Made by a program: the position numbers and the translations under genes. 64,000 bases of DNA from Takakia lepidozioides (taxonomy: Eukaryota; Plantae; Bryophyta). The notes under the pieces were generated by a model. That model searched no databases. It was not told the origin of the DNA and saw only the letters and a list, made by a program, of their open reading frames with translations. The stretch covers positions 44,702,001 to 44,766,000 of the forward strand of contig CM060732.1 of the NCBI GenBank assembly GCA_030704615.1, given 5' to 3'. Shown here one piece after another: positions 1-28,600 of the stretch. The first letter of the stretch is position 1. Each line of letters begins with the position of its first letter.

Positions 1-931
<931 letters not shown>

Positions 932-1490
932 TCAAAGTCAGATATCCACTTGAACTGTACTGCCAGGATGGGGATACCACACCAAACATGGTGCAAATGA
1001 ATCTAATCCTAATATGCATCAACTGAACCCAAGAAACAGAGGCAAGGCTCTAGAGGAGGGAAGTAGACAATCAGGCTGGAAAAGGCGAACAACATAGAAA
1101 TCACATCTACAAAACAAGTAGGAAAGAAAGTCAGTGATGTATCAAAACAAAACAAGGCTAAGAAACAAAAGAAAGGTTAGATGGAAAACTCTGACATAGA
1201 GAGCAAATAAAGGATAACAAACCTCAGAAAGTAGATAGACGTGCAAGGAAAAGAACCACAAAATCAGGCCAACAGGAAGAGGAAGAGGAGGGGAAGAGGA
1301 AGAACAGAGGCCGGCACGGGACAAGCCAGAAGTTTGCAGTCCCTTGCAGACTTCTCTTCTCCCAACATCTCTTGTACTGGGAAGCTCCCCATCATGTCCT
1401 GAGGGGGTTTGACATAGACCTAATTGACAGACAAAATGGTTTAGGATGGGAACATGTTGTCTGTTCCCAATCAAAATGAGCGTTCAGACC

Positions 1491-1520
1491 CGGATCCGCT
1501 CCGGCCCACTTCGGCCCACT
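1491..1520. promoter_or_regulatory. Promoter elements upstream of H3.3: two tandem site II (GGCCCA) motifs and a histone-octamer-like GGATCCGC
   Basis: ggccca at 1503-1508 and 1513-1518; cggatccgct at 1491-1500 is a near match to the plant histone octamer CGCGGATC on the minus strand. Confidence 0.45.
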
Positions 1521-2256
1521 TCGTCTCCTTTTTCGCTTCCTTGTTGAACCGTCTGCCTCCGAGCGTGTGGTAATTCTCCACAGAAACTGCTAGCAATCTG
1601 ATGGATCTGGGTGCACTGAAAATTCGAAAAGACAACAAATGGGGAGGAGTTTCTTGCAGACGGAATCGGAAACTTTCACTCGTGATTGGGTGGGAAAGAA
1701 GAAAAGTGCACCTTAGATTACACCTTACTTCCTTGTTTAAACCCGCACAGTGAGTCTCCGTGATTGATTTTCCATGAGCACGAAGGGTATGTCAGGTAGG
1801 TTGTGTCTGGCTGCAAAAGTCCCACATCTGCTTGAAGCTAAACCCAAGTTTCAAACCTAATCTTACATTGACTAGATTGTAATTGTTGTCTGTCTGCCAT
1901 AACCTCCCTATAAACCCTGGAAATTGTGATCTCTTATTTGAACTTCACGGAGTAATTGGCCGATCTGCCCTCTTTTGGGGGATTTCAATGGAAATTAATT
2001 AGAACGGATTGTTCCCCTTCAGGGTTCGTCCATCTGAATTCCTAGAAGTGTGAGGGAAAGAGAGGAGGGGGAGGGAAGGAAAGGATGGACCAATGAACAC
2101 ACCAGGGATGGTCGCTGCTGTAACAGAGCAAATGAAATATGGCGTGAATCAAAGCGACAAACCATCAATGCTGAGGATGTGCTCAAAGCTGTTGAGGAGC
2201 TGGACCTCACCGAGTTTTGTAAGCCCTTGAGAGCTGCACTTGCAGGTGTGTATGGT

Positions 2257-2282
2257 TCTCTCTCTCTCTCTCTCTCTCTCTC
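2257..2282. repeat. (CT)n microsatellite
   Basis: About 13 consecutive CT/TC units in the intron after the NF-YB11-like exon 2. Confidence 0.9.
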
Positions 2283-2369
2283 ATGATGATTTGCAGTGAT
2301 GACTTGAGTAGATTATTTGAGTTTTTTGTTCTGTCTTTCCTTGAGGGGCAAGGTGCCGGAGCAAACTCT

Positions 2370-2690
2370 AGTAGAAAACCTCTTCAGGGAACACCTCAGA
2401 AGTTTGAAAAAATAAAAAAAATCAACAAAGGTTCTCACACTCTGTGTGTCTTCCCTGGCCCTTGTTGGGGTCTAATTGTTGGGCAGCTCACACACAGCAG
2501 ATTGATGCTCGGGTGAAGGGATTTCTAGGAGAACCTGGAAAGCTGTTTATACCAATGTAAGTCCCACTACTGGAGTGAGCCCCTGACAAAGGTAGCGTCT
2601 GTTCCCTCTTGTTCTACCCAAACTGGGCGTGGGGTCTATGGCCACAAGGCTACGGCAAACAACATCTCATGAGTACATTCTCTGTCTTCC
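2370..2690 (+). mobile_element. LINE 3'-end fragment in an intron (same family as 21330-22150)
   Basis: gttccctcttgttct...tggccacaaggctac...catgagtacattctct recurs as reverse-complement copies at ~21330-21570 and ~21915-22150, one of which adjoins a LINE-type C-terminal CCHC motif. Confidence 0.6.
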
Positions 2691-3149
2691 ATTTGCATGA
2701 CTTATCTAAACTGTCTTTAAAGAACAAAGTTCTTGAGCTGTTATGGGTGCTTGCAGGCTTCAGGAAAGATAATAAGTCTAAGAAAACTGAAACGAAAAGG
2801 AAAGGTGGGGTTAGAAAGAGAAAGCCTGATGGTGATACTAAAGAGGGGGAAGCAAATTCAAGAGGGGAGCTTGAGGATGGCGTTGCCATGGTGGCAGATT
2901 ACAGTTCACCGGAAACTTAACTCTAATAGGCACAAGCACAAGATAGAGAGATACATGTCTCAAAATTGGTGGACAGTGGAAACTTTGAAAGTCGACCAAC
3001 AATGTTCTTTGGATCTGTGGAAGTTTCATAGGGGAACTGATTTCTTTGACAATGGCAATGGTGTCTGTCCATTCTGAGGTCATGAGGTCATCTCTCATTA
3101 TTCAGCTTGTGGTGTAGTTAACAATTCAGCACAAATTGGACAACATTGT

Positions 3150-5812
3150 TTGGACCCACGGTGGTTTCATTAGGGAATGCCCTCTTTCAAAACGACGTGA
3201 TGTCCATCTCTGCATCTTCATTGTATATAAGGTCTTCTTGTACATCATCCAGTTTATGAGGGTGAGGGTGAGGTTGACAAAGTTGAACCAAGTTTGGACT
3301 TCCGACATTATTTTGAACAATTCTTAAGATCAACATGCTTAGGAAAGTTGTATGTACTCATCAACCGCACAAGAAGCAGGGGTCTCTTTGAGACAACATC
3401 TGGTAAATTGACCTAGAACAAGACACGGATCTACTACTATAAGAGCAATACGATTGTGGGAAGATGGACACCGTGAGTCTGAAATCACAGATGATCAGCA
3501 TTCTTACAAAACTGGCACATGGAATTCCTTCAATTTTACTCTACATTTTTCAACATTGTGTGACATATGTAGAGATTGATGGTATTACAAAACTGGCCAC
3601 AGGGAATTCCTTCAATTTTACTCTGCATTTCTCAACATTGTGTGACATATGTAGAGATTGATGGTATGAACAAATTGCAGTTGCTTCATAGACCAGGATT
3701 CTTCTGTTTAGGACTTGGGCCTCATAAGAATGTATGCACCATGTCTCACACAACTTGGGTCAACCAAAAAAATTAAGTAGATTAAAAAGATGAATATAAC
3801 TTCACATATACCCAAGCTTATCATATAGAAGCACTTCTATTACCTTTTTGAGCGCGAAGAGGTTGTCCTTGTACGCACATCTGAAACATGTCACGTAGTC
3901 TTCCAATGTCTGTGTTCCATCCCATTTCACGTACAAGCCAAACGAATTTGTATGCATTATGACTTGCTCCTTCGCATTCGTCATTACCTGCGTTTCCAAC
4001 ATGCATTGTCACATAGCAGTTCACGGAATTCATGCCAGCAAAGCAAATTGGGGGAAGTACCTTGAACCACCAAGTCATGCGGTTGAGCCACACATCCACT
4101 GCAGGGTCGGAAACTTTGAGTGGAAAAGACCACATGGTCCTTACACTCTCCGATGCATTCCAGATTGACAGCCACCGTGTCTGCCATTTCCGATCCAATG
4201 TCAGGAGCAGGAAGTAGAGTGGCTATTGCTAGGAAGGAACTTCAGTGCATTGAAACCTCACCTTCTCTTTCGCCTCCACACATGCCATTGACAGGTGATG
4301 CAGTTTCTCCAACTGCATGGTCGGCTGCATGGCCCGAGAATAATGTTTTGCAATCTCGGGGATGAAGTCATTTCCAAGTGCCGGATCTGCAATGGCCACC
4401 AGCTTCACAAGCTTTGATTTGTATTTGGTTTTGGACTTGACCCCGGCTTCCTTCAAGTGCTTGGTCAATGACTGCAACGGTTTTAACTGCCCCTCATTTT
4501 CCACGAAGAAGTGTTTGGCATGGGAAATCCAGCTTGATGTTTGACTGCCAAGAAAAACATGCAGAAGCATTACATTCGATCCATGTGGAAAAGTGACTGG
4601 AAATTGGGGAAGGATGAGCAGAGGAAAATGAGAGGACGATTTACCATTCACCTCCACCATTCCATCCATAGTCAGGCGATACCATGTCCGGTCTGTTTTT
4701 GCCACGGCTTTTTGAATGAGCTCGGGCTCCAGCATTTCGGCAAACATGTGCGGGTCAGTGAGACAAGTTTTCCTCACCTTGTACAATATATGTGCCATGT
4801 GGGTATGCACGTACGCATTTTCAGTGACCCTGCAAGGCACACTCTCCAATTCAGTCCACTGAAGCACAGAAACAAAACTGATTGGAAACCGAAATGCGGC
4901 ACCGCATTTCGGATGTGCATGAGAGGGTATGAGAATCTTACAAGTTGAGGTCCGCCATGGCATTCTTGAGCAGGGAGAAGTCTACCGCCTTCACTTTGAG
5001 GATGACACACCCACCATGTAATGCCAGCCAATATGCTTGGCATGGTTCTGCTTGATGTACTTCCACCAGGCAAGAAGTTGGTGATTCCCGTCCCACACAA
5101 AAAACATTTTGCCCGACATATGGCCGAAGTCTGGATCACCATTCAGCATTGTCTCGAATTCGTCGTTGCGATTGTGCCAGTGGGTATCCCATGCTGACAA
5201 TTCATCCGCAGTGGGTCCACGAGTTTCGCCGTCCTCATTCTCAATGGAAACGTAGAAGGCTGGCGAACCTAGATGATACCCTTCTCGAAATGCGAACTTG
5301 AGCTTATCCACATCTCCTAGAAGAGCTTGCCTGACAATGGGAAGGGGGACCATGCGACGGAGTGGAATTCGAAGAGTCCGCTGGAATACCCTGCTGCCTA
5401 GAACTCTGCCAATACTACTGTGCATCTCCTCCAACATTGTATCCGCTGCACTTTGGAATTCCTCCGGAGACATTTCTGCATGTGGTGGTAGGGGCTGAGC
5501 AGCTGGAGCATCCCCAACTGCAGCTGTAGTCTGGGGAATATGTGCGGGCAATTGTTGCATTGTAGAGGCCTCCTCCGGGCCTGCAGTATTCTGAAGTTCT
5601 TCCACAACGGTGGTGAAGTCCTGTTGCAAAAGTTGAGCATCAGCACCCTCCTCGCTGACAGTTCGACGACATCGGGCGATCCCATTGCCTTCGCTGCAGC
5701 AGAGACGCCCCCAACATCACATGTCTGGAAATCAAGCAGGAACTGGGCTTTTAGTGGAATCGGTTTTGCGGGAGACTGCTCCGCCCTCCCCCTGATTGCC
5801 TTCTACTTCTTG
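3150..5812 (-). pseudogene. Degenerate multi-exon gene with a ParB/Sulfiredoxin-like N-terminal domain; probably transposon-borne
   Basis: ORF 5629-4991 contains VRQALLGDVDKLKFAFREGY..SPAFYVS and FFVWDGNHQLLAW (ParB/Srx DGNHR-type motif with R>Q). A frameshift near 5010 continues as CVILKVKAVDFSLLKNAMADLN|GTAAG. Further exon-like blocks lie at ~4830-4650, ~4540-4061, ~3987-3844 and ~3755-3695, with stops and frameshifts. Confidence 0.6.
3505..3666. repeat. Imperfect tandem duplication of an ~80 bp unit
   Basis: ttacaaaactgg..caca.ggaattccttcaattttactct.catt..tcaacattgtgtgacatatgtagagattgatggta occurs twice in tandem. Confidence 0.85.
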
Positions 5813-5814
5813 AT

Positions 5815-6432
5815 TTTGTGCGTTTGCAATGCTTGTGCAAGCCTGGCAGCCCTGGAAAAGGGCAAAGGGTGCATGGTGACATCATCAAAGCTGGAATTGT
5901 ACCAAATGTCATTCTGGACAGTGCCCTGCTGGACATGTATGCGAAATGTGGGTGCATTGAGGATGCAAAGGGAGTATTTGACAATGTGGCTGAATGAAAT
6001 GTGGTGTCGTGGAATCCGATGATCGCAGGATATGCCCAGCATGGTTGTCATAGGGAGGTCCTGCAACTATTTGAAGGAATGCAAAAGAATGGCTTGAAGC
6101 TGGTCAGTATCACCTTTATATGTGTTCTTTCTGCATGCAGCCACACTGGCCTACTGAATGAAGGAAGACGCTACTTCGATTCCCTGAGTCAACATCATGG
6201 TGTCACCCTGCTAGTAAAGCACTTTGGATGTGGACCTTCTGGACGTGCGGGACAACTAGTACATGAGGCAAGGTATCTGATTAATAAAATGTGAATCAAT
6301 TTAGATGTTGTGGTGTGGAAGGCCTTGCTTGGTGCTTGCACAATCCATGACAATGTGGAGATGGCTGAATGTGTGGCAACATCTATCCTCAAGTGGGATG
6401 AATAGGATGCCGCGACTTATGTGTGTTGCTAT
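5815..6432 (+). pseudogene. PLS-class PPR fragment (L/S/P2/L2/S2/E motifs) with frameshifts and stops
   Basis: [66 protein letters not shown] and VVWKALLGACTIH occur in shifting frames. Confidence 0.9.
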
Positions 6433-6920
6433 AATTCTGGGTTTGGGTGGTGGAGCTTCTCCAAAGCTTGAAGATGGAAGTGAATACGAATTTTAATGAG
6501 CTTGATGAGAGGGGCAGTCCTGTGCACAAGTTTGTTTAAATTTGGACATGTTTGTTTGTTTCTCGTGGTGTGGCTTTGGATGGAGCCCTTGACGAACTTG
6601 CATGAATATTGTAAAAAACTAACCTTAACCCACCAAGATCCAATCCCACGGTGGATGATTGAAAGTTCATATAGTGAATGTAAGGGTATTTGGGTATGTT
6701 GTTATTGATTGATGCGGCTTGTGAAAATTGAACATTGAAATGCAGATCCGCCATTTTTCTTCTAGAAAAAACAAAACACGAGACCTCTTCATGTAACACT
6801 GTGGGGATGACCCACCCCTTTTTTTGTGAAAAATTGAACTTAGTTCTCAGAATTCGTCGCTAGTAGTGCGGAGCAACGCGAAGCCCTAGTTCTAGCGGCG
6901 ACCGAAGGTCGGAAGCTAGT
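6432..6920 (+). mobile_element. Helitron-like 3' end (copy 1), followed by a second small hairpin + CTAG end
   Basis: 6797-6890 (ggggatgac...ttcgtcgctagtagtgcggagcaacgcgaagccCTAG|T) is shared with 14848-14944 and homology stops exactly at CTAG-T. It is followed by a cgacc-gaa-ggtcg hairpin and gaagCTAG|T at 6916-6920. Confidence 0.55.
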
Positions 6921-7286
6921 TTAGCGTAGAGCAGGAATAGGGTGCCAAAGTGCCACGTTTTCGTCGCCATGTCATCATCGCCACTTTTTGTCGTCAAATT
7001 CTGTCGAGTCTGCCCGGACTTCCCGCCCGAAATACGCCAATAGAAATTGCCGCGCCAACGTTTTCGGAACTGCCCGAAATGCCCGAACTTGTCACTCACA
7101 CGCGCGCGCTGCCGCTTCTTTCTCGCTCGCGTTTGCGTGTCTCTGTGCACGTCTGCCTTTGTGCGCTAGGTGTGGTTGCCGGAATCATGGCTGGTGTGGA
7201 GGGATAGCACCAACAATGCAAGAGAAATTCACAACGAGGAGGAGAAGAAGCCTTTGGAGGGGGGAGATATCACCAACCAAGTCCAA

Positions 7287-7370
7287 ATGCATCACGATCC
7301 ACAGCTGTGGCGTGAGGATGCCCTTGAATTCAACCCTGAGCAATTTGCTAGAGGAATATCCAATGCTTGT
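7287..7370 (+). pseudogene. Cytochrome P450 (CYP72-clan-like) PERF-region fragment fused in frame to PPR motifs
   Basis: MHHDPQLWREDALEFNPEQFARGISNAC matches the HHDPxxWGxDAxEFxPERFxxGxxxAC segment of CYP72-clan P450s. Confidence 0.75.
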
Positions 7371-9190
7371 GCAAGCCTGGCAGCGCTGGAAAAGGGCAAA
7401 GAGGTGCATGGAGACATCATCAAAGCTGGGATTGTACCAAACGTCATTCTGAACACTGCCCTGGCAGCTCTGGAAGAGGGGAAAGAGGTCCATGGCGACA
7501 TCGTCAGAGCTGGAATTGTACCAGCTGTCATTCTGAACACTACCCTGGTGGACATGTTTGCAAAATGTGGGTGCATCTAGGATGCAAAGGGAGTGTTCGA
7601 CACTATGGCTGAACGAGGTGTGGTGTCGTGGAGTGCGGTGCTTGCAGGGTATGCACAGCAGGGACGTGGGATGGAGGCTTTGGAGACCTATGAGCAAATG
7701 ATGTGCGACGGGGTGAAGCCCAACCACATCACGTTTGTGTGCGTTTGCAGTGCGTGTGCAAGCCTGGCAGCCTTGGAAAAGGGCGAAGAGGTGCATGCCG
7801 ACATTGTCAGAGCAAATGATGGGGGAAGCACATCATGTTTATGTGCATTTGCAATGCTTGTGCAAGCCTGACAGCCCTGGAGAAGGGCAAAGAGGTGCAT
7901 GGGGATATCATCAAAGCTGGAATGTACCAAACGTCATTCTGAATATTGCCCTGGCAGCTCTGGAAAAGGGGAAAGACGTCCATGGCGGCATCTTCAGAGC
8001 TGGAATTGTACCAGATTTCATTCTGAACAATACCCTGGTGGACATGTTTGCAAAATGTGGATGCATCTAGAACGCAATGGGAGTGGTCCACACTATGGCT
8101 GAACAAGATGTGGCGTCGTGCAAGCCTGGCAGCCCTAGAGAAGGGCAAAGAGGTGCATGAGGATATCGTCAAAGCTGGAACTGTACCAAATGTCATTCTA
8201 AACACTGCCCTGGCAGCTCTGGAAAAGGGGAAAGAGGTCCATGGCGACATCTTCAAAGCTGGAATTGTACCAGCTGTCATTCTGAACAATACCCTGGTGG
8301 ACATGTTTGCAAAATGTGGGTGCATCTAGGATGCAAAGGGAGTGTTCGACACTATGGCTGAACGAGGTGTGGTGTCGTGGAGTGCGGTGCTTGCAGGGTA
8401 TGCACAGTAGGGACGTGGGATGGAGGCTTTGGCGACCTATGAGCAAATGATGTGCGACGGGGTGAAGCCCGACCACATCGCGTTTGCAGTGCGTGTGCAA
8501 GCCTGGCAGCCCTAGAAAAGGGTGAAGAGGTGCATGGCGACATCGTCAGAGCTGGAATTGTACCAGATGTGATCCTGAACATTGCCCTGGTGGACATGTA
8601 TGCCAAATGTGGGTGCATGGAGGATGCAAAGGGAGTGTTCGACAATATGGCTGAATGAGATGTGGTGTCGTGGAATGCAATGATCGCAGGATATACACAG
8701 CATGGTTGTCATAGGGAGGTCCTGCAACTATTTGAAGGAATGCAAAAGAACGGCTTGAAGTAGTATGTGTTCTCTCTGCATGCAGCCACACTGGTCTTCT
8801 GAATGAAGGAAGACGCTACTTCGATTCCCTGATTCAAGATCATGGTGGAACTCCGACAGTATAACACTTTGGCTGCATGGTGGACCTTCTTGGACGTGTG
8901 GGACAACTGGATGAGGCAGTGGACCTGAACGCGCGGCAACATCTATCCTCAAGTGGAATGAACAGGATGCCGCGACTTATGTTGCTATCAAACATCTATG
9001 CTGTAGCTTGCAGGTGGGTTGATACTGTAAAGGTGAGAAGAATGATGAAGGTCAGAAGGGTTGAAAAGGAGCCAGGTCGCTGCTGCATTGAGGTTTGCAA
9101 TAGGGTGCACACCTTCATTGTAGATGACAAGTTGCATCCCAGAATTAAGGAAATCCATGCTGAGCTGAGAAGATTGTTTGGGAAGATAAA
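7362..9190 (+). pseudogene. PLS-class PPR fragments ending in E1/E2/E+ (PG box), heavily disrupted
   Basis: Repeated ACASLAALEKGKEVHGDIVKAGIVP.VILN.TLVDM.AKCG and VSWSAVLAGYAQQGRGMEALETYEQMM motifs; LLSNIYAVACRW...KEPGRCCIEVCNRVHTFIVDDKLHP; many stops. Confidence 0.92.
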
Positions 9191-9194
9191 GGTG

Positions 9195-9570
9195 ATTTGT
9201 CAGGAGCCGTTTTCCAGATTACCTATGATTACCTACAAGAAACCTGCATGGGTAGATGGTCAAGTGGAAGCCGCAGCAGCAGCGACACAATTGATAAAAC
9301 CAAGTGTTGCTAATGAAGGCACCTTCTTCAACACATTTCACCCTGTTTTTCCCTCTTATCAGAATCGGCCCTAAATATCCATATTGAATTCTGCAAGTTA
9401 GCTGGTTGAGTGAATCTTTGATAGTTTGGAGTGACTTTGACATGATATTCCCAACTGACAACAGGAAAGTATCCTAAAAGAGGTAACAGAGATGAGGAGA
9501 AGCTGTGGAATGAATATTTTTCTGACCCCAGTCAATGGTGGGACAACCGAGGCAAAAAAGTGAATGCCTG
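9195..9570 (+). pseudogene. Fragments of PDF motifs of organellar single-stranded DNA-binding (OSB-type) proteins
   Basis: ~9200-9270 reads RFPDY.. then ..ITYKKPAWVDGQV; ~9465-9568 reads GKYPKRGNRDEEKLWNEYFSDPSQWWDNRGKKVN, matching the WxxFFxxPxxWWDNRxxK...PDF...W motif. An intron-like stretch separates the two. Confidence 0.7.
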
Positions 9571-9579
9571 TCATATTAC

Positions 9580-12500
9580 CTGTCATTCTGAACACTATGG
9601 CTGAACGAGATGTGGTGTCGTGGATTGTGATGTTTGCAGGGTATGCACAGCAGGGGTGCGGGATGGAGGCTTTGGAGACCTATGAGCAAATGATGGGGGA
9701 AGGGGTGAAACAGCCCACATAATGTTTGTGTGCGTCTAGCAGCCCTGGCAAAGAGATCCATGGTGACATCATCAATTGTACCAGATGTCATCCTGAACAC
9801 TGCTCTGGTGGACATGTATGCCAAATATGAGAGCATTGAGGATGCCAGGGGAGTGTTCAACCTATGGCTGAACGAGATGTGGTGTCGTGGAACGCGATGC
9901 TTGCAGGGTGTGCACAGCAGGGGCGCGGGATGGGGGAAGGGGTGAAGCTCGACCACATCATGTTTGTGTGCGTTTGCAGTGCGTGTGCAAGCCTGGCAGC
10001 CTGGAAAAGTGCAAAGAGGTCCATGGTTGCATCGTCAAATCTGGAATTGTACCCGGTGTCATGCTGAACACTGCCCTGGTGGACGTGTATGTCAAATGTG
10101 GGTGTATTAAGGATGCCAAGGGAGTGAGATGTGGTGTTGTGGAGTGCGATGATTGCATGATATGCACAGCAAGGGTGCGGGATGGAGGCTTTGCAGACCT
10201 ATAAGCAAATGATGTGCAAAGGGGTGAAGCCCAACCACATCACATTTGTTTGTGTTTGCAGTGTGTGTGCAAGCCTGGCAGCTCTGGAAAAGGGGAAAGA
10301 GGTCCATGACGACATCGTCAAAGCTGGAATTGTACCAGATGTCATCCTGAACACTGCCCTGGTGGACATGTATGCCAAATGTGGGTGCATTAAGGATGCG
10401 AAGGGAGTTTTCAAGACTATGGCTGAACGAGATGTGGTGTCGTGGAACTCAATGCTTGCAGGGTATGCACAGCAGGGGCGTGGGATGGAGGCCTTGGGAT
10501 GATGTGCGAAGGGGTGAAGCCCGACCACATCACGTTTGTGTGCGTTTGCACTGCGTGTGCAAGCCTGACAGCCCTAGAAAAGGGCAAAGAGGTGCATGGT
10601 TGCATCGCCAAAGCTGGAATTGTACTAGATGTGATTCTGAACAATACCCTCGTAGACATGTATGCCAAATGTGGGAGCATTGAGGATGTGGAGGGAGTGT
10701 TCAACAATATGGCTGAATGAGATTTGGTGTCATGGAACGCCATGCTTGCAGGATATGCACAGCAGGAGCGCGGGATGGAGGCCTGGGGGAAGGGGTGAAG
10801 CCCGATCACATCATGTTTGTGTGCGTTTGCAAGCCTGGCAGAGCATGGCATTCTAGCAAAGAGGTGCGCCATGGTGACATCATCAAAGCTGGAACTGTAC
10901 CAAATGTCATTCTGGACGCTGCCCTGGTGGACATGTATGTGAAATGTGGGTGCAGTGAGGATGCAAAGTGAGTATTTGACAATATGGCTGAATGAAATGT
11001 GGTGTCGTGGAATCCGATGATCGCAGGATATGCCCAGCATGGTTGTCATAGGGAGGTCCTGCAACTATTTGAAGGAATGCAAAAGAAAGGCTTGAAGCCG
11101 GACAGTATCACATTTATATGTGTTCTCCCTGCATGCAGCCACACTGGCCTTACTGAAATCCAGATGTTGTGGTGTGGAAGGCCTTGTTTGGTGCCTGCAA
11201 AATCCATGGCAATGTGGAGATGGCTGAACGTGCGGCAACATCTATCCTCTAGTGGGATGAACAGGATGGCGCGACTTATGTGTTGCTATCAAACATCTAT
11301 GCCGCAGCTGGCAGGTGGGATGATACTGCAAAGGTAAGAAGATTGATCAAGGTCAGAGGGGTTAGAAAGGAGCCAGGAGCCAGGTCGCTGCTGCATTGAG
11401 GTTGGTAACAGGGTGCACACCTTCATTGTAGATGACAAGTTGCATCCCAGAAACATCTATGCCGCAGCTGGCAGGTGGGATGATATTGCAAAGGTGAGAA
11501 GAATGATCAAGGTCAGAGGGGTTAGAAAGGAGCCAGGAGCCAGGTCGCTGCTGCATTGAGGTTGGCAACAGGGTGCACACCTTCATTGTAGATGACAAGT
11601 TGCATCCCAGAATTAAGGAAATCCATGCTGAGCTGAGAAGATTGTTTGGGCAGATGAAGGAGGCGGGGTATGTGCCTGACACGCGCTTTGTATTGCGAAA
11701 TGGGGGAGGAGGAAAAGGAGCTTTCTCTTTGCCACCACAGTGAGAAGCTGGCCAATGGTTTTGGGCTGATCAGCACGACCCCTAGGACGTCTCTCCGTCT
11801 CATCAAGAATCTTCGAGTGTGTGGTGACTGCCACACCTCCACCAAATTCATCTCAAAGATTGTTGGCCGAGCAATTTTTGTATGGGACGCTAACCGCTTT
11901 CACCACTTTGAAGATGGGATTTGTTCTGGAGTGCGATGATTGCAGGATATGCTCAGCATGGGTTTGGTAAGGAAGCTTTTGAGATCTATGAGCAAATGCT
12001 ACAGGCAGGGGTGACCCCTGATTTGGTCACCTGGCAGCTCTGGAAAAGGGTGAAGAGGTGCATGGCGACATTGTCAGAGCTGCAATTGTACCAAATGTCA
12101 TTCTGAACAATACCCTCGTGGACATGTATGAAGGGAGTGTTCAACAGTATGGCTGAACAAGATGTGGTGTCGTGGAGTGCGATGATTGCAGGATATGCAC
12201 AGCAACGGCGCGGGATGGAGGCTCTGGAACGCGATGCTTGCAGGGTATGCATAGCAGGGGCGCGGTATGGAGGCTTTGGAGACCTATGAGCAAAAGATGT
12301 CCAAAGGGGTGAAGCCTGACCACATCACATTTGTTTGTGGTTGCAATGCGTGTGCAAGCCTGGGAGCTCTGGAAAATGGGAAAGAGGTCCATGGTGACAT
12401 CGTCAAAGCTGGAATTGCACCAGATTCATCCTGAACACTGCCCTGGTGGACATATGCCAAATGTGGGTGGATCGAGGATGCGAAGGGAGTTTTCAACACT

Positions 12501-14545
12501 GTGGCTGAACGAGATGTGGTGTCGTGGAACGCGATGCTTGCAAGGTATGCACAGCAGGGGCACGGGATGGAGGCTTTGGAGACCTATGAACAAATGATGG
12601 GGGAAGTGGTGAAGCCCGACCACATCACGTCCGTGCGTTTGCAAGCCTGGCAGCCCTGGAAAAGGGCAAAGAGGTGCATGGTTGCATCACAAAAGCAGGA
12701 ATTGTACCAGATGTGATTCTGAACAATACCCTCGTGGACATGTATGCAAAATATGGGTGCATCGAGGATGCGGAGGGAGTGTTTGACAGTATGGCTGAAC
12801 GAGATTTGGTGTCGTGGAGTGCGATGATTGCAAGATATGCATAGCAAGGGTGCGGGATGGAGGCTTTGGAGACCTATGAGCAAATGATGGGGGAAGGGGT
12901 GAAGCCCAACCACATCACGTTTGTTTGCATTTGCAGTGCGTGTGCAAGCCTGGCTGCCCTGGAAAAAGGGAAAGAGGTCCATGGTGACTTCGTCAAAGCT
13001 GGAATTGTACCAGATGTCATCCTGAACACTGCCCTGGTGGACATGTATGCCAAATGTGGGTGCATTAAGGATGCGAAGGGAGTGAATTTCAACACTATGG
13101 CTGAACGAGATGTGGTGTCGTGGAACGTGATGCTTGCAGGGGTATGCACAGCAGGGGCGTGGGATGGAGGCTTTGGAGACCTATGAGCAAATGATGGGGG
13201 AAGGGGTGAAGCCCAACCACATCACGTTTGTGTGCGTTTGCAGTGCGTGTGCAAGCCTGGCAGCCCTGGAAAAGGGCAAAGAGGTGCATGGTTGCATCGC
13301 CAAAGCTGGAATTGTACCAGATGTGATTCTGAACAATACCCTCGTAGACATGTATGCCAAATGTGGGAGCATTGAGGATGCGGAGGGAGTGTTCAACAGT
13401 ATGGCTGAGCAAAATTTGGTGTCATGGAAAGCCATGCTTGTACCAAATGTCATTCTAGACACTGCCCTGGTGGACATGTATGCCAAATGTGGGTGCATTG
13501 AGGATGCAAATGGAGTATTGGACAATGTGGCTGGCTTGAAGCCGGACAGTATCACCTTTATATGTGTTCTCTCTGCATGCAGCCACACTGGCCTACTGAA
13601 TGAAGGAAGACGCTACTTCGATTCCCTGAGTCAAGATCATGGTGTCACCTCGCCAGTAAAGCACTTTGGCTGCATGGTGGACCTTCTGGACGAGCAGGAC
13701 AAGTACATGAGGCAGTGGACCTGATTAATAAAATGCCAATCAATCCAGATGTTGTGGTGTGGACGGCCTTGCTTGGTGCCTGCAGAATCCATGGCAATGT
13801 GGAGATGGCTGAATGTGTGGCAACATTTATCCTCAAGTGGGATGAGCAGGATGCCGCGACTTATGTGTTGCTATATCAAACATCTATGCTGCAGCTGGCA
13901 GGTGGGATGATATTGCAAAGGTGAGAAGAATGATGAAGGTCAGAGGGGTTAGAAAGGAGCCAGATGACAAGTTGCATCCCAGAATTAAGGAAATCCATGC
14001 TGAGCTGAGAAGATTGTCTGGGCAGATGAAGGAGGCGGGGTATGTGCCTGACACATGTTTTTTTATTGCATGATGTGGAGGAAAGGAATTTTCTCTTTGC
14101 CACCAAGCTGACCATTGGTTTTGGGCTGATCAGCACGACCCTTATGACGCCTCTCCGTCTCATCAAGAATCTTCGAGTGTGTGGTGACTGCCACACCTCC
14201 ACCAAATTCATCTCAAAGATTGTTGGCCGAGCAATTTTTGTATGGGACGCTAACCGCTTTCACCACTTTGAAGATGGGATTTGTTCTGGAGTGCGATGAC
14301 TGTAGGATATGCTCAGCATGGGTTTGGTAAGGAAGCTTTTGAGATCTATGAGCAAATGCTACAGGCAGGGGTGACCCTTGATTTGGTCACCTTCATTTGC
14401 ATTCTCAATGCATGTGCCCTGGAAAAGGGCAAAAGGGTTCATGCTGACATTATCAAAACTGGAACTGGGTCATATATTAATTTGGAGAATACTTAGTGAA
14501 CATGTATGCTAAATGCGGGAGCCTGAAGGATGCGTGCCAAGTGCT
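9580..14545 (+). pseudogene. Tandem array of PLS-E-DYW PPR pseudogene segments containing two truncated DYW domains
   Basis: Numerous P/L/S motifs in broken frames. DYW 1 at ~11670-11929 ([20 protein letters not shown]...[41 protein letters not shown]); DYW 2 at ~14040-14289 lacks HSE. Both lack the terminal CGDYW. Confidence 0.93.
11291..11610 (+). repeat. Near-exact 160 bp tandem duplication inside the E2/E+ region
   Basis: aaacatctatgccgcagctggcagg...gttgcatcccag starts at both 11291 and 11451. Confidence 0.9.
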
Positions 14546-14549
14546 GATG

Positions 14550-14944
14550 AGACTAAGAGAGGCCTAATGAGGGCTTGGGTTTCTCGATTTTTTTTTCATT
14601 TCCTTATTTCGGGAGGGCGATCAGTGCAGCTACATGGGGTGGTTATTTGATGTGATGTCTGATGCTTGGGGAGGGACGCGAGGAGGGAGGGAGGGAGGGG
14701 GAGGGGGAGGGGTGTCTGCATACCGGCAGAAAAGGGGGTTCAAATCCCCCTCACTTCTTGGGCATAGATAGGGGTATGCCTATGTTATACTTTTGCATTG
14801 TTCCTCATGTTTTCTGCATAGTATATATTTCCAATTATCAAAATAATCACTGTATGCGCGGGGATGACACGCCCCTTTTTGTGCCAATTGAACGTAGTTC
14901 TCAAAATTCGTCGCTAGTAGTGCGGAGCAACGCGAAGCCCTAGT
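14550..14944 (+). mobile_element. Helitron-like 3' end (copy 2)
   Basis: 14848-14944 is nearly identical to 6797-6890 and ends ...gcaacgcgaagccCTAG|T. Confidence 0.55.
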
Positions 14945-19091: not shown

Positions 19092-21329
19092 TGGCACCTT
19101 CGATATGTGAGTCTTTCCCTTGGATCCTGTGGAGGCAATGTTGCTAAGAGTAAAAGAACAAGTAAATGAGAGGCAGAAGGAGGAGGAGGACTACCAGACA
19201 AGACAAATCTCAAGGGAACTTGTCCCTTAGTGACACCCACTGGAAGCATGGGGCCTCTGCTGGTTGGAATCTGGTGCCAAGGAACTCTTTAGGTTCTTAC
19301 CACCTGTGCCAGTAGACCAACCAAGCAAGTCTGCATGAGCACAAGTTTTGTGGCATGTTTTTCAAGCACCATGTTCTGGGTTTTGTTACCAGATTCTTCT
19401 TGCGGAGCGGGTACTACTCAGATCTCTAGTAACCTTTTGGAGGCAAACTTCTCTCTGTTTGACTCCATGAAATTAAGGCCTGATTCCTAGAGTGTTGTCA
19501 TTTAATGTTGTGTGCGTTTTTCATTTCTTTGCTAATATTCCCTGAGGTCTTGAATCTGTGACCGCCTTTCTATTGGGTTTTTCTTGATAGAGCCATACCA
19601 TTAGAACCTACACAACACTGTAATAGCTACCCAGAGCTCAATTGTGGAAAAATGGGCAATGAGGCTTTCCTGTGGATGGGGGGCTTCAAGTTTATTTGAT
19701 TCCAATCACATGTGATGGAGTTTGATAAGAATTTGTTCTCTTTGAATTCATAGCTGTCACATATTTCTACACGGATAGAGATTGAGACTTTTGTGATCCT
19801 CTGGGAGTGTAAACACTCATCAATGTAGTCAACTGCAGAGAAAATTTGCCTTCCCAGAAACCAATTTGCATTTTTAGGAACCCCCTGAGGATGGCCCTGC
19901 CCTTCCCATGAGCCCAGTAGTCCACCCCTGGATGCTACCAAACATCATCAATGTCACTAAACACCACATTGCAAAGCATTGTAGCTCAAACTACCCGGCC
20001 TCGATTTGAGAGCTGAGCATCGGTGCTATACAAGGGTTTACAGCACCAGAAATTTTCATTACATCAGGTATGCTTACAGCTTTTTGTCACGATCACAGTT
20101 CTACCATTACAAAACAGAGTCTGACTAGTTGTTGGTAATACAAGCAAATTTTATTCAAGGAGGAGTTTAGACTTGAACTATATCATCACTCCAGCAGAGA
20201 GCAATGGGAGCTCTCCTTGAGTCCTCTCCCTATCAATCGCGACCCTCCAATCCAGATAACCCATGCTACGAAACCTTAGAAGAATATTGGAAGGACTAAT
20301 AAAGAAGAACCGCAAAGACCAAATCGCATATCAGTGGTGTCCTTTGCCACCATGTTTGGCCTCCTCCTCAGCATGGCGCAGGTGCCGAATCTCCGTGGGC
20401 CAGCCAACGGCGTAAGAGAGAACCATCTTCGGCTGCCTTGCTCAGAACAAGCATACTAACAAAGACCTCCTCGCCTTCGATTGCAGGCTCTCGAGAACAC
20501 AGACAAGTTTGCTGACCCTTTCTAGCCACTTCCCTTTCCTCCTTTCCGTTTCTCTGTTCCATTCATGGGAACATGTTCTCGAGAAGTTTTCATTGTAGAC
20601 TGTTTCGAGAACTGTTTCTTTGTCTCTCTTTTCACAAAAACATGGGCTCATGTTGTGAAGAACAAACTGAGACCCATCAGTGCTGTCTTTGCAGGGATCA
20701 TGAGGAATACTGGATGGCAAAGGAAAATTTCCAGAACAAGACTCGGTAGCTCGAGTCTGAAGCAGAGGTCAAATTCGATACTCGATACTGCCATTCATAG
20801 GCCCCTGTCAGCGTCCTCTCTCTTTGGTTTTGGCAGGTCAATCGTATGCCATTGTCTCTCTACTCTTACCGTTACCAGTGTTGCTTGCTCTGTCTGGATA
20901 TAGGTTGCTTCGTTGCTTCAATGGGGATTAGGTGTTGGTAGTTGAGTTTCTCGAGTGCTAATTGCAGCTCCCTGATCTTTCTGTACTTCCACAATCCCTG
21001 ATCTTCATCTATTCAGCAGCATTTGTGTGTGTCACTTGTTCACTGCCTGACGTTTCTTCTGTTTGTTTATTCAACCCCAATGTCGATGTCCTGCACGTCT
21101 GTTTTCACATCTCCTTGCTATGACCGCCTCTGTGTATCCCCATCGTTCCTGCGAACGTTTGATATGACATACCTGGTTGGGGGGGTTGAGCCCACTGATA
21201 TACCACAGCCAGCAAGCAGGTTCGAAGGGAAAGGAGTATTATTCATACTAGTGAGCATCGATCGTGCAGAGTATGACGTTCATTAAACCACTGCTGCTAC
21301 AGCCTTCCAGTATCAGCACGGGACATAGA

Positions 21330-22150
21330 TAGAGAATGTACTCATAGACATTGTTTGTTAGCCTTGTGGCCATTGACCCCGCGCCCGGTTTGAGCGGAAC
21401 ACAAAGGGGCAGAACCTACGTTTGTCAAAGGCTGATGCCGTTAGTAAGACTTACCTTTGAATAAACAATTATTGATCTAGGTTTCCCAGCTATCCTCTAG
21501 AAATCCCTTTCCAGATGCGTCAACCTGCTGTATGTGGTTTGGGGCCCAAAAAGGGCCTGGGCTTTTGGCTCAGCATCAACTCTTTCAAAGTTGATAACCA
21601 GAGGTACAGGCACAATTCCCTTCGTAAACTTGAAGAGAGCATCTCTCTGGTGAGAGAACACAGAGAAAGAATCAGAAAATGAATATAGTCTTCAGGTTGC
21701 CCACACAATGGGCAATTGCAAGCTCCCTTTCCTCTCTGTGCAGTATCACAGAAACCAAGAGCAAGGAAAATAATGCTGCACAAGGACTGTCTCATACAGG
21801 GCTCTTTGGGTCCCCTGAAGGCCTCTGCCAGGGATCTCCGAGAAAATAGGGCACCAGAAGAAAACAGGATCTTCTGTCTCCACTTGTACCATTGGACAAG
21901 TCCTGTACTCGAGAGGAGACAATGTACATGAGACGTTGTTTGTTGTAGCCTTGTGGCCACAGACCCAGCACCCAGTGTGGGCAGAACAAGAGGGAACAGA
22001 CACTACCTTTGTGAAGGGCTCATTCCGGTAGTGGGATGGCTTACCTTGATATAAACAATTGGTTCAGGCTTTCAAGATATCCTCTAGAAAGCCCTCACAC
22101 AAATCTGCTGTCTGAGCTGCCCGGCAATTAGACCCCAACAGTGCCAGGGC
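21330..22150 (-). mobile_element. Two tandem LINE 3'-end fragments
   Basis: CPLCGQPEDYIHFL...C (LINE ORF2 C-terminal zinc-knuckle-like motif) at ~21730-21660, followed by a 3' segment that is repeated at 21915-22150 and 2450-2690. Confidence 0.65.
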
Positions 22151-24079: not shown

Positions 24080-24800
24080 AAGCACCTGCAAAGAAAGCTT
24101 TGGAAGGAGATGAACGACCTCGCGCGATGCATGCGGGCAAATAAATGTCCAACAAGCATTTCTTATCAGGTCGGCAAACCAGCCATAGCAATGCCACTCG
24201 GACAGCTGCTTCTAAGCAACAAAGTGTCCACCCTCAAGTTGGCTACAATGCACTGCACACACTTGTCACAGAACTCCATCCAACAAAAACACCCTGCGAC
24301 CAGTGCTGCCATCACATTATCTCCAATGAAAACTGGGCTCATACCATACATGTAGGAGAAGGCAATCTCCAGTCCCTCCGCGCTCACAGAAGGGTCATCA
24401 ATCTGCAGTTCGATTTGCAGCTTTCTGTACTCTGTCCAGGGGCCTGAGAGAAGTAAATGGAAGTACGAAGACTGCAAGAGTATAATCCGATAGAGCGGAT
24501 AGTCCTTCCCCATAAAATTTAAGGTTATGTCCGAGAACATATACCCCTGCAACCCCTGCTGCTGCACATGCTCGCAAAGTGCAACCCCCGCCTCCACCAC
24601 TGCACTTTTCCCCTCTCTCCCCCAACCCGCTTCAAGTCGCAGTGCAACCCAGAATCTCTCATCCCTCCCTCACCCGCAGCCCAGGTGTCACTCCCGTCGT
24701 CCCAGGGAAGAAGACACCTGCTGCACCTATCTCCTCCACAATGTGCAGCATCTGCTGGTCGCCAATAAATTTCTTCTTCCATGGGCTCTGGCATCTGCTT
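24080..24800 (-). pseudogene. BTB/POZ-domain protein (germ cell-less-like plant family), frameshifted
   Basis: ALCEHVQQQG...FSDITLNFMGKDYPLYRIILLQSSYFHLLLSGPWTE...DDPSVSAEGLEIAFSYMYG; after a frameshift near 24200 it continues YGWFADLIRNACWTFIC...LLPKLSLQ. Confidence 0.75.
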
Positions 24801-25714: not shown

Positions 25715-26032
25715 TCAGGACATCTGTCCTGAGGAGCTCATCTTATTTTTAGAGCAATTCCACGGGTCCTCGTGAACTCCTGATCGCCCACAGTGAGTAC
25801 CCAAGGCGGAACGCGTCAAGATCTTAGAATAAACCGGCAACATCCTATCCACGCAAGCCACCATCCTCTTCAATTGAATCTTCAGCTCTGAGACCTCAGC
25901 AGCGAGTTCCTCAACCTTCTTGTACACAGACTCGGATGGTACATCATCGGAGCTGAACAACCTAGATGGCACCAATCTTCGCAAACCCAAAGCATGAAAG
26001 CGCACTGAAATCTCCCGCATGGCCGCCATCAT
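25715..26032 (-). CDS. Unknown ORF/exon with a mitochondrial-presequence-like N-terminus and a coiled coil; possibly a gene remnant
   Basis: Splice acceptor ctgcAG|G directly before ATG. MMAAMREISVRFHALGLRRLVPSRLFSS is Arg/Ser/Leu-rich with an RLF|SS cleavage-like site, then VYKKVEELAAEVSELKIQLKRM. Confidence 0.35.
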   Translation of the reverse strand: MMAAMREISVRFHALGLRRLVPSRLFSSDDVPSESVYKKVEELAAEVSELKIQLKRMVACVDRMLPVYSKILTRSALGTHCGRSGVHEDPWNCSKNKMSSSGQMS

Positions 26033-26099
26033 CCTGCAGTTGCTTACACATGTCAATATGGAAAGTAGAAGTGGTGATTGAACATAGACCCCTACTCTC

Positions 26100-27820
26100 A
26101 ATCAAATTGCCAGCTGAACTGTGCTAAGTTCCTTGTCAAAGGTGAGGTGGTCTTATTGGGTGACTTCAATGCCCCACCATTGGGCCTTTTGGTGAGGATG
26201 AACTGAATTTCTAATGGAAGACGGTCAAATAAACTGTCCCAAAGAACTTTAACTTTCAACCTTGAATAATAGGTCAAAAGGAGACCTAATGCAATGGACC
26301 TGTAAAACCACCAACCTGTTCTTTATGCCCATTTAAGCTGACAAGCTGAATTCCATACACATCACAAGGGAATCTACCCATCTATCCTCAATTTCATGGA
26401 CCTACCAAACTGTAATATATTTTTGGAGCTTCATCATTTCAACACCCATTTTGAGCTGAAAGCCCAAACTGAGGAACCATCCTTGTGGATTACCAAGCTT
26501 AAGGGATACCGTGGTATCCATGATAAACCATTACGGCATGGTTTGATATTACGAACAGAACAGGTATCATAGTGGACAAGAGTTTGTTTCCCCACAGTGC
26601 CAGTGTGTTTGATTGACAGAACTGATATTAGTACCTCTGACCACATCTTGGTTTGGACTAAAGATCAAAACGTGTTTCCCCAACACCAAAAGATCTGTGA
26701 AATGTTTGATTCGGAAGTGGCACATACAAAAATTTCCAAAATGAAGAGGTCAAGGCTGAATATGTCCAGGCCTTGCAACAGGTTCTCCCTCAATTTGTCT
26801 ATTCGCTCCAAGACTGGCAGTGCAAGAAATGAAGTCAAAAGAGCTGTGGATTCTTGGGAGAGTTTCATCTCCTCTGTGGCTGACAAGATCATAGGGAGGA
26901 CACTAATTGTCTGCAGTAGAGCTATTGATTGGTGGACCAATGAGATCAAACTCAGCCGAGAGACGAGTCCTCTATAAAGACTGCCGCAATTTGAAAGTCA
27001 ACAAAACAAATTGTGGGCTAGGTACTACCAGATCCGCCAAGATAACAGTCAGCTTGTAAGGTTTCAGAAGAAAATATATACCGGGACAAGTTATACAATG
27101 AAATAAACTCAAATCGCCATGGTGGTAAAGACAAGGGATTCTGGTTGGCCCTTCGACGTCTATACTTGTCAGCATGTACAAGCGCTGAGGACTACTAAGG
27201 GTGGAGTGGTGACTTCAATGGTTGATACTGTCAAAACCTTTGAAACTCACTACAGTATCCTTGGTAGACATTCTAGCTCTAGCTGTGAGGGGTCTTTTGA
27301 AGAATGGAAGGACGCACTTGGAAAAAACTGTTCCCACGATTCAAGACAGCCCTGATGACCTGGAGTATATTTCAAAGGGTTACAATGCTCCCATTAGTTC
27401 TTCTAAGATTGTGGAAGCAATTGAGCATTTACACGGATATAGAGCTGGTGGACCTGATGGCATAGTCAACAAGCTAATCAAGCAGGGTGGCGGCCCCATC
27501 ATAGAGGCCCTTGTACTTCTCTTTAACCTTATCTGGAGGACTGACATGATCCCCTTTTGCGACAGGGGATCATTGTCAATCTACACAAGAAAGGGGAACT
27601 ATTAAGGCATCACGCTTCTCAATGCAGATATTTTGCAGAGATATAAGTACTCGTCTCGAGGTCGATCTGGAGTACTAGAGGTTGTTTCCACAAAGGCCGA
27701 GCTGGCTTTCTGAGAAACAGGGGCTGTGGGGATCTTCACTCTAAGCCAGATTATTCAGTGAAGGAAAAAAGAAGGGAAACCAACTTTTGTTTTTGTCTTA
27801 TGACACAGTGTGGGGAAGAC
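26100..27820 (+). mobile_element. Decayed LINE ORF2 (APE endonuclease + start of reverse transcriptase), truncated
   Basis: KGEVVLLGDFNA (~26140), DISTSDHILVW (~26625), WWTNEIK, AGGPDGIVNKLIKQGG, KKG..GITLLN and YDTVW (~27800-27815), in broken frames. Confidence 0.85.
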
Positions 27821-28420
27821 AACCTGAGTCAGTTGATTCGGGGAGGGCAGAGGGTTGGTGCTCAAACAACTTGTACTGGAGTTAACAAGAGATGGTCCAG
27901 CTACCTGCGAGACACCAAAGTCATGGCACACCTATGACAATGTCAAACAATACCCGATTTATCCTGCAGGAGTTATAAGTTGCTTGGAGAAGGGCATGGC
28001 TTTGGTGGACTCTACGAGATTTCAGGTCTCTAGGGGAAGAATAGGCAACAAATTGCACTTGTTCAAGTTCCTAATTTCACTTTCTCATAAACTGCACACC
28101 AAAGTACCTAAAAAGATATGTATGTCAGTGTATGCCGCAATCATAATCTACACAAAACCAAGACAACAACAATGCAGATTCCATTTCAGAAATGTCTTTT
28201 GCCTACTTCTACACATCAGGTCTAATCCGCAGGGATGGTGGTAAGAACAGCAAGCATCCTTTGATTCATTCTATGATTCATATCTAGTTGTGGAAGAAAG
28301 AACGAAAGAAGCCCACATACAGAGACAGAAAAACACAGCCACAGTAGAGATTGTGGGCAGGACACAATGCGAGTCAGAAAATGGACGGGAAGATATCTTT
28401 TACAAAACAGAGAGACGTGC

Positions 28421-28600
28421 GTTGCGGAAAGAAAGTGGATGAAGATCTTGGCGCTTTCAGAGAAGGCAAGAAGAGCGTCCTTATTCACAGGAATATCCTT
28501 CTCTCCTCCCAGTGCGCACGGGCGAGCTCCGCAAGCTTCCCTTTCACAATTCTCTTCACATTGGCCTGCGGTAGGTCTCACTCTCTGGCCCTGCTGCCAT
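28421..28600 (-). pseudogene. NF-YB11/DPB4-like exon 1 with two frameshifts and a GC donor
   Basis: MAAGPES/DLPQANVKRIVKGKLAELARA/LGGEKDIPVNKDALLAFSESAKIFIHFLSAT read in three successive frames (single-base losses near 28577 and 28513). It ends in phase 2 (AC|GCACGT), matching the phase-2 start of exon 2 at 2127 on the opposite strand. Confidence 0.85.

What the first reader, a model, noticed from the sequence alone, without database searches (positions are those of the whole stretch)
2127..28600. One gene split across both strands, 26 kb apart: NF-YB11/DPB4-like exon 1 on minus, exons 2-3 on plus
Seen: exon 1 (28600-28421, -) ends ...FLSA-AC in phase 2 and exon 2 (2127, +) begins A-GCA-AAT. 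Joined, they give a continuous histone fold (...FIHFLSAT ANEIWRESKRQTINAEDV...). Known: this is the NF-YB11/DPB4 (Pol epsilon/CHRAC) architecture. Inference: a ~26 kb inversion, with breakpoints at ~1750-2110 and ~27820-28400, broke intron 1. Two frameshifts in exon 1 favour a real, aged break over misassembly or cross-strand trans-splicing. No N-gap is present.
Basis: partly seen in the sequence, partly recalled or inferred. Interest (0 to 1): 0.8.

Follow-up and report, generated by a model that had tools for sequence, protein, structure and literature searches.

The report
Dead moss DPB4 gene, inversion-split
A moss copy of the small histone-fold gene DPB4 (a DNA polymerase epsilon accessory subunit) lies in two complementary halves on opposite strands 26 kb apart, and its first exon is also damaged; this is most likely an ordinary dead gene broken by an inversion.

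Summary
Exon 1 of a DPB4/POLE3/NF-YB11-type gene lies at 28600-28421 (-). Exons 2 and 3 lie at 2127-2246 and 2757-2920 (+). Moss orthologues match each piece once in the 64 kb, and the pieces abut exactly at the conserved phase-2 intron 1 position.

Neither half has its missing partner nearby. An intron-containing histone H3 gene on the minus strand fills the space left of exon 2.

Exon 1 carries three disabling lesions:
- Two 1-bp deletions, both GAGGA to GAGA.
- A GT to GC change at the splice donor.

Exons 2-3 are open with intact splice sites. Exon 2 has two private changes at columns conserved in at least 90% of orthologues (C to W, F to L).

Both exons rank the orthologues the same way, with Sphagnum closest, so one origin is likely. 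The breakpoints have no inverted repeats, terminal inverted repeats or N gaps.

My estimates:
- Real ~26 kb inversion through intron 1 of a now-dead gene copy: about 0.6.
- Misoriented assembly block: about 0.15.
- Independent fragments: about 0.12.

I could not test whether an intact paralogue exists, nor check reads across the junctions. The scan has noted two other inversion-split genes in this same assembly. The finding is ordinary and of low interest. I never built or searched the joined spliced model.

The parts
28421..28600 (-). DPB4/POLE3/NF-YB11-like exon 1 (start codon to the AC before intron 1). It is broken by two 1-bp deletions, at about 28577 and about 28503-28508.
   Evidence: Translations in three frames. 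tblastn to P0001, P0013 and P0019 at E 1e-18 to 1e-21. DNA alignment showing the two missing bases.
28419..28420 (-). Intron 1 splice donor, mutated from GT to GC (AC|GCACGT).
   Evidence: Sphagnum, Physcomitrium, moss L008 and L001 all have AC|GT at the same place.
27606..28418 (-). Presumed 5' remnant of intron 1, with the right-hand inversion breakpoint somewhere inside. The position is not resolved.
   Evidence: Inference. Orthologous intron 1 is about 410-600 bp. No exon 2/3-like sequence lies downstream on this strand.
1650..2126 (+). Presumed 3' remnant of intron 1, ending in the AG acceptor at 2125-2126, with the left-hand breakpoint somewhere inside.
   Evidence: Inference. The acceptor context matches orthologues. 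No exon 1-like sequence lies in 815-2126. The histone H3 5' region lies to the left.
2127..2246 (+). Exon 2: the end of helix alpha-2 through alpha-3/alpha-C of the histone fold. The frame is open and both splice sites are intact. It has private C to W and F to L changes.
   Evidence: Pfam CBFD_NFYB_HMF positions 44-65, E 0.0027. 85% identity to Sphagnum. Conserved-column count.
2247..2756 (+). Intron 2 (GT...AG). It contains a (CT)n run and a 235-bp repeat at 2453-2687.
2757..2920 (+). Exon 3: lysine-rich then acidic tail. The frame is open and it ends in TAA at 2918-2920.
1..814 (-). Flanking histone H3 gene (intron-containing, H3.3-like). Its start codon is at 814-812 and it runs off the window start. 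It marks the left flank, which is not inverted.
   Evidence: ORF translations [24 protein letters not shown] and [24 protein letters not shown]. Pfam Histone, E 2.7e-9.

Best explanation
This is one copy of the moss gene for DPB4/POLE3 (Arabidopsis NF-YB11), the histone-fold accessory subunit of DNA polymerase epsilon and CHRAC. The copy once lay whole on the minus strand next to what is now position 28600. A two-break inversion of the block from roughly 1650-2126 to 27606-28418 cut it inside intron 1. That carried exons 2-3 about 26 kb away and flipped them to the plus strand, beside an unrelated histone H3 gene. The copy is not functional. Exon 1 has two frameshifts and a GT to GC donor change, and the two halves cannot be transcribed together.

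Shown: the anatomy, the lesions, the complementarity and the single origin.

Inferred: that the event was an inversion, which came first (break or lesions), and that it is real rather than an assembly artefact.
For: - Each of the three exons occurs exactly once in 64 kb, and together they cover the orthologue end to end with no overlap or gap.
- The junction sits at the intron 1 position and phase that Sphagnum, Physcomitrium, Marchantia and a further moss share.
- Nothing exon 1-like lies in 815-2126 (+), and nothing exon 2/3-like lies below 28420 (-).
- A minus-strand histone H3 gene, with its 5' region, fills the space left of exon 2. An unseen plus-strand exon 1 would have to lie beyond a nested H3 gene.
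- Per-exon DNA identities rank the orthologues the same way for both halves. Sphagnum is closest at 76% for exon 1 and 82% for exon 2, then the Bryopsida mosses and Marchantia.
- Exon 1 has three disabling lesions. Exon 2 has two private changes at columns conserved in at least 90% of 106 orthologues.
- The window has no N and no inverted repeats at the junctions, which is where assemblers tend to flip blocks.
- Long open frames elsewhere argue against a generally indel-ridden assembly: a 769-aa PPR ORF and the H3 exons.
Against: - No breakpoint signature was found, whether repeat, duplication or transposon end.
- The ancestral gene order cannot be read. The DPB4 loci of Sphagnum, Physcomitrium and Marchantia share no neighbour with this window.
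- The decay pattern is uneven. Exon 1 has two indels but no private substitution in 21 conserved columns, and exons 2-3 have no indel in 93 codons. Both indels are the same GAGGA to GAGA change, which could be local consensus errors.
- The scan's notes list two other genes with flipped parts in this same assembly. That could reflect biology or a weakness of the assembly.
Confidence: 0.6

Rival explanations
1. Assembly artefact. The ~26 kb block is misoriented in the assembly and the gene is collinear in the real genome. It would then be either an ordinary collinear pseudogene or, if the two 1-bp deletions are consensus errors, an intact gene using a GC donor.
For: - Both frameshifts are the same GAGGA to GAGA loss of one G.
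- Exon 1 has no private change at conserved residues.
- Exons 2-3 are fully open with good splice sites.
- Other flipped gene parts are noted in the same assembly.
Against: - The window has no N gap.
- Neither junction has inverted repeats that could mislead a long-read assembler.
- Sequence quality elsewhere in the window is good.
- The donor GT to GC change is a substitution, not an indel.
Confidence: 0.15
2. Two independent partial copies. The minus-strand exon 1 and the plus-strand exons 2-3 are unrelated leftovers, for example fragments duplicated or carried by transposons, or the remains of two paralogues. They only happen to be complementary.
For: - The region is rich in mobile and mosaic DNA: PPR mosaics at 5.8-14.9 kb and a LINE-like fragment at 26.6-27.6 kb.
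- The two halves have decayed unevenly.
Against: - Exact complementarity at one intron would need two separate events with ends in the same ~500-bp intron.
- No terminal inverted repeats or direct repeats frame either fragment.
- Both halves give the same ranking of orthologues and similar relative divergence.
- The window holds no extra partial copy.
Confidence: 0.12
3. A still-functional split gene, with the two halves transcribed from opposite strands and joined by trans-splicing.
For: None beyond the intact acceptor at 2125-2126 and the open exons 2-3.
Against: - Two frameshifts in exon 1, with a stop codon directly before the DLPQANV frame.
- The donor is GC rather than GT.
- Nuclear trans-splicing of protein-coding genes across strands is not an established mechanism in land plants (general knowledge).
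Confidence: 0.01

Closest known systems
DPB4 / POLE3 / CHRAC-17; Arabidopsis NF-YB11 (AT2G27470); Physcomitrium 'DNA polymerase II subunit B4' (P0013); Sphagnum CY35_14G107500 (P0019)
   Same: - The same three-exon layout, with intron 1 in phase 2 after ..LSA-T and intron 2 in phase 1 after ..LA-G.
- 74-93% amino-acid identity over the histone fold.
- A lysine-rich then acidic tail.
- The naming NF-YB11 = DPB4 homologue follows PMC6801657.
   Different: - The exons lie on opposite strands 26 kb apart.
- Exon 1 is frameshifted twice and its donor is GC.
- Exon 2 has C to W and F to L at highly conserved positions.
- It cannot encode the protein.
Genes disrupted by an inversion breakpoint inside an intron (the general class of structural-variant pseudogenes)
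   Same: - Two complementary halves in opposite orientation.
- Each half keeps its own flank.
- Secondary decay of the orphaned parts.
   Different: No flanking inverted repeats or transposon ends were found that would name a mechanism. The ancestral arrangement is not documented in any relative.
Other flipped gene parts noted by this scan in the same genome (WDR25 exon, s1-469950; PAO exon 1, s1-493614)
   Same: Part of a gene lies on the strand opposite to the rest in the same assembly (AI notes, not checked here).
   Different: Those cases are small (0.2-4 kb) and lie within one gene. This block is ~26 kb and carries several other genes.

Membership tests
DPB4/POLE3/NF-YB11 (histone-fold subunit of Pol epsilon/CHRAC) | CBFD_NFYB_HMF histone-fold domain (Pfam PF00808) | tested here: inconclusive
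   Only exon-sized pieces could be scanned. Exon 2 matches profile positions 44-65 at E 0.0027 and 18.4 bits, below the 21.4-bit cut-off. The exon 1 pieces (24-28 aa) gave nothing. The orthologues they match carry PF00808.
DPB4/POLE3/NF-YB11 (histone-fold subunit of Pol epsilon/CHRAC) | Best matches are named DPB4/POLE3 orthologues rather than NF-YB proper or NC2-beta | tested here: met
   tblastn and blastp best hits are Sphagnum, Physcomitrium and Marchantia 'DNA polymerase epsilon subunit 3 / II subunit B4', at 74-93% identity per piece.
DPB4/POLE3/NF-YB11 (histone-fold subunit of Pol epsilon/CHRAC) | Conserved exon-intron structure of the land-plant orthologues | tested here: met
   The positions and phases of introns 1 and 2 are identical to Sphagnum L002, Physcomitrium L004, Marchantia L010 and moss L008.
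DPB4/POLE3/NF-YB11 (histone-fold subunit of Pol epsilon/CHRAC) | Intact, translatable coding sequence (a functional member) | tested here: not met
   Two frameshifts and a GC donor in exon 1, and exons on opposite strands. It is a pseudogene of the family, not a working member.
Gene split by a chromosomal inversion | Complementary, non-overlapping halves in opposite orientation, each present once | tested here: met
Gene split by a chromosomal inversion | Both halves derive from the same gene copy | tested here: inconclusive
   The two exons give the same ranking of orthologues and similar relative identity. The pieces are short and no close relative is available.
Gene split by a chromosomal inversion | Breakpoint signature (inverted repeats, transposon ends, junction duplications) | tested here: not met
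   None found by self-blastn, sensitive blastn or the repeat finder. Many end-joining inversions leave no signature, so this does not exclude an inversion.
Gene split by a chromosomal inversion | Collinear arrangement in an outgroup, or reads spanning the junctions | not testable with these tools
   Orthologous loci share no neighbours with the window. No reads or close relatives are at hand.

The most novel reading that the evidence does not exclude
This is the only DPB4/POLE3 gene of this moss, so the species has lost a histone-fold subunit of DNA polymerase epsilon/CHRAC that is otherwise kept across land plants, and an inversion killed it. I could not search for an intact paralogue in the rest of the genome, so my evidence does not exclude this.
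Probability: 0.1. Interest if true: 0.45.

Novelty: new member of a known kind. Interest (0 to 1): 0.2.

Why it matters
It matters little by itself. It is a clean textbook example of a gene copy cut in an intron by a structural rearrangement and then decaying.

Its practical value:
- Annotation. Neither half should be called as a gene, and exons 2-3 beside the histone H3 promoter could otherwise be mis-modelled.
- Assembly quality. It gives one more site, alongside the two other flipped gene parts noted in this genome, where assembly orientation can be checked with reads.

It would become moderately interesting only if no intact DPB4 exists elsewhere in the genome.

Tried and rejected
- A second copy of either half in the window: none (tblastn at E up to 10). 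Weak hits at 33365-33502 and 21687-21547 (E 0.3-2) are chance.
- Homology between the GA-rich stretch before exon 2 (2052-2079) and the GA-rich 5' leader of exon 1 (28624-28597): local alignment score 34 against a shuffle maximum of 33, so low-complexity chance.
- Inverted repeats or terminal inverted repeats at the breakpoints: none.
- Synteny with Sphagnum, Physcomitrium, Marchantia and a metagenomic moss contig: no shared neighbours.
- An annotated protein from this genome containing exon 3: none in the 5.8-billion-protein collection. A window-encoded PPR protein is not on record either, so this genome is probably not in those collections.
- P0001 (Logan SRR22405887) as a same-species intact paralogue: its DNA is only 73-76% identical and only within the exon. 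It comes from another lineage or is a very old duplicate, and the run accession appears in no paper.
- The rest of the LINE-like element beside the left breakpoint: not present, so the inversion did not simply cut that element.
- Earlier scan notes by sequence for the two breakpoint regions: blank, which per the operators means nothing.
- The joined, spliced protein model was deliberately not built, searched or folded. All searches went exon by exon, by reference.
Full report
**What the window is.** The 64 kb has 46.6% GC, a CpG observed/expected ratio of 0.45 and no N. It carries PLS-type PPR genes and PPR mosaics, bHLH genes, a BTB gene and an intron-containing histone H3 gene. It is therefore land-plant nuclear DNA. 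Earlier notes of this scan call the genome a moss, and the best protein matches are moss proteins. It is not human.

**The observation.**
- On the minus strand from 28600, the sequence reads MAAGPESE in one frame.
- It reads DLPQANVKRIVKGKLAELARAHWEE in a second frame, with a stop codon directly before the D.
- It reads GEKDIPVNKDALLAFSESAKIFIHFLSA in a third frame, followed by the two bases AC that end the exon at 28421.
- On the plus strand, an AG at 2125-2126 is followed by A + ANEIWRESKRQTINAEDVLKAVEELDLTEFCKPLRAALAG up to a G|GT donor at 2246/2247.
- After a 510-bp intron, exon 3 runs from 2757 to a TAA at 2918-2920 and encodes a lysine-rich then acidic tail.

**How the pieces match orthologues.**
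- tblastn with moss orthologues puts residues 1-65 of the Physcomitrium protein on 28598-28420 (-).
- Residues 66-104 fall on 2128-2244 (+) and the tail on 2738-2917 (+). E-values run from 1e-7 to 1e-21.
- Nothing else in the window scores better than E about 0.1.
- Each exon is therefore present once, and the three together make exactly one gene.

**Family.**
- The nearest proteins are Sphagnum CY35_14G107500 and Physcomitrium 'DNA polymerase II subunit B4'. Both are 161 aa with Pfam CBFD_NFYB_HMF.
- More distant matches are Marchantia, lycophyte, fern and seed-plant 'DNA polymerase epsilon subunit 3 / NF-YB11' proteins.
- A review of plant DNA polymerases lists NF-YB11 (AT2G27470) as the single Arabidopsis DPB4 homologue. 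It notes that its role in Pol epsilon has not been shown experimentally in plants (PMC6801657).
- Pfam on the exon-sized pieces is weak, because they are 24-40 residues long. Exon 2 matches profile positions 44-65 at E 0.0027, below the cut-off.

**Gene structure in relatives.**
- In Sphagnum (L002), Physcomitrium (L004), Marchantia (L010) and a further moss contig (L008), the gene has three coding exons.
- Intron 1 splits the Thr codon after ..FLSA in phase 2. Intron 2 follows ..LA-G in phase 1.
- Intron 1 is about 410-600 bp in these species.
- The two halves in the window end and begin exactly at that intron 1 position.

**Damage.** A DNA alignment of exon 1 with five orthologous exons shows one base missing at about 28577 (GAG-GAC reads GAGAC). 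Another is missing at about 28503-28508, where the stretch from GCGCAC to CCTGT is 20 nt against 21. Both are the loss of one G in GAGGA.

| Species / locus | Exon 1 end and intron 1 start |
|---|---|
| Sphagnum | AC\|GTATGT |
| Physcomitrium | AC\|GTGAGT |
| L008 | AC\|GTACGT |
| L001 | AC\|GTACGT |
| Window | AC\|GCACGT |

The window has a T to C change at the second intron base.

- Exons 2-3 have no stop or frameshift, and their three splice sites are intact.
- Among columns conserved in at least 90% of 106 full-length orthologues, exon 1 has only the moss-wide Y to F change (1 of 21).
- Exon 2 has the moss-wide D to E change plus private C to W and F to L changes (3 of 22). Only 8 of the 106 orthologues have three or more such mismatches.
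- The copy is therefore dead, but the decay is light and uneven.

**Does each half lack its partner locally?** Yes.
- A histone H3 gene sits on the minus strand left of exon 2. Its start codon is at 814-812 and its first coding exon encodes [24 protein letters not shown].
- Further H3 exons run off the window start (Pfam Histone, E 2.7e-9).
- A CT-rich leader and a TGGGCC-containing upstream region reach to about 1600.
- No exon 1-like sequence lies in 815-2126. A plus-strand exon 1 could exist only beyond a nested H3 gene, outside the window.
- Below 28420 on the minus strand there is no exon 2 or 3.

**One origin or two?**

| Compared with | Exon 1 DNA identity | Exon 2 DNA identity |
|---|---|---|
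| Sphagnum | 76% | 82% |
| L008 | 71% | 79% |
| Physcomitrium | 70% | 75% |
| Marchantia | 70% | 75% |

- For calibration, Sphagnum against Physcomitrium is 73% for exon 1 and 78% for exon 2.
- Both halves stand in the same relation to the same relatives, which fits a single source gene.
- The pieces are too short, and the nearest relatives too distant, for a decisive tree.

**Breakpoints.**
- If one inversion did this, the flipped block runs from somewhere in about 1650-2126 to somewhere in about 27606-28418.
- The ancestral gene then lay whole on the minus strand next to the present 28600, with the bHLH gene at 32.5-36.4 kb upstream of it. The H3 gene would have faced the BTB/LINE end of the block.
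- I found no inverted repeats, terminal inverted repeats or direct repeats at either junction.
- A GA-rich resemblance between 2052-2079 and 28624-28597 is no better than shuffled sequence.
- The mechanism is therefore open. End-joining of two breaks is the default inference.

**Why not more certain?**
- The DPB4 loci of Sphagnum, Physcomitrium and Marchantia share no neighbour with this window, so the ancestral order cannot be read.
- This genome's proteins are apparently not in the searchable collections. I could look neither for an intact paralogue nor for transcripts.
- Two identical GAGGA to GAGA losses without any private substitution at conserved residues could be local consensus errors.
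- The scan has noted two other flipped gene parts in this same assembly (s1-469950, s1-493614). That may be biology or an assembly weakness.
- Against an artefact: there is no N and no repeat at the junctions, the open frames elsewhere are long and clean, and the donor change is a substitution rather than an indel.

**Verdict.**
- Real ~26 kb inversion through intron 1 of a DPB4 copy that is now a pseudogene: about 0.6.
- Misoriented block in the assembly: about 0.15.
- Independent fragments: about 0.12.
- The rest goes to more complex rearrangements.
- Functional cross-strand splicing is effectively excluded by the frameshifts.
- The finding is ordinary. It would gain interest only if the genome holds no intact DPB4.

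All work went exon by exon, by reference or by reading the window file.

Noticed in passing
window 1-814 (-): Intron-containing histone H3 gene (H3.3-like), intact as far as visible. Its start codon is at 814-812, it probably has a 5'-UTR intron, and TGGGCC motifs lie at about 1500-1530. It runs off the window start.
   Followed up: partly
window 2453-2687; 21327-21536; 21917-22149: A ~235-bp repeat inside DPB4 intron 2 matches, in inverted orientation, two direct copies about 590 bp apart at 21.3-22.1 kb (72-78% identity). The layout looks like a small terminal-repeat element with a solo repeat in the intron.
   Followed up: no
window 26597-27605 (+): By eye this is a LINE-like fragment: the end of an endonuclease (..STSDHILVW..), then ..GPDGIVNKLIKQGGGPII.. 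just before where a reverse-transcriptase domain would start. It stops abruptly at about 27605, so it seems cut at its 3' side. Pfam gave no hit, so this is unconfirmed.
   Followed up: partly
window 5800-14900; 38204-39922 (-); 42896-45988 (+): Dense PLS-type PPR repeats: a mosaic array at 5.8-14.9 kb, and two PPR genes facing each other (42068-43898 matches 40715-38917 inverted at 71%). The 42896 gene changes frame before its E/DYW-like end.
   Followed up: no
window 24169-24600 (-): Exon of a BTB/POZ-domain gene (Pfam BTB, E 8e-5), near the right end of the putatively inverted block.
   Followed up: no
window 46952-48860 (-) and 32460-36407 (-): Two bHLH transcription-factor genes. One has an ICE/SCREAM-like basic region (..[17 protein letters not shown]..). 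The other has an LRL-type C-terminal motif (..GLCLMPISLATAIS..).
   Followed up: no
window 29614-29634 and 30822-30842: A 21-nt inverted repeat, 95% complementary, with arms 1.2 kb apart in the presumed DPB4 upstream region. It may mark the ends of a small transposon.
   Followed up: no
same genome, other pieces (scan notes s1-469950, s1-493614): At least two other genes in this assembly are noted as having a part on the opposite strand. Checking all three sites together against reads would show whether this is biology or an assembly habit.
   Followed up: no
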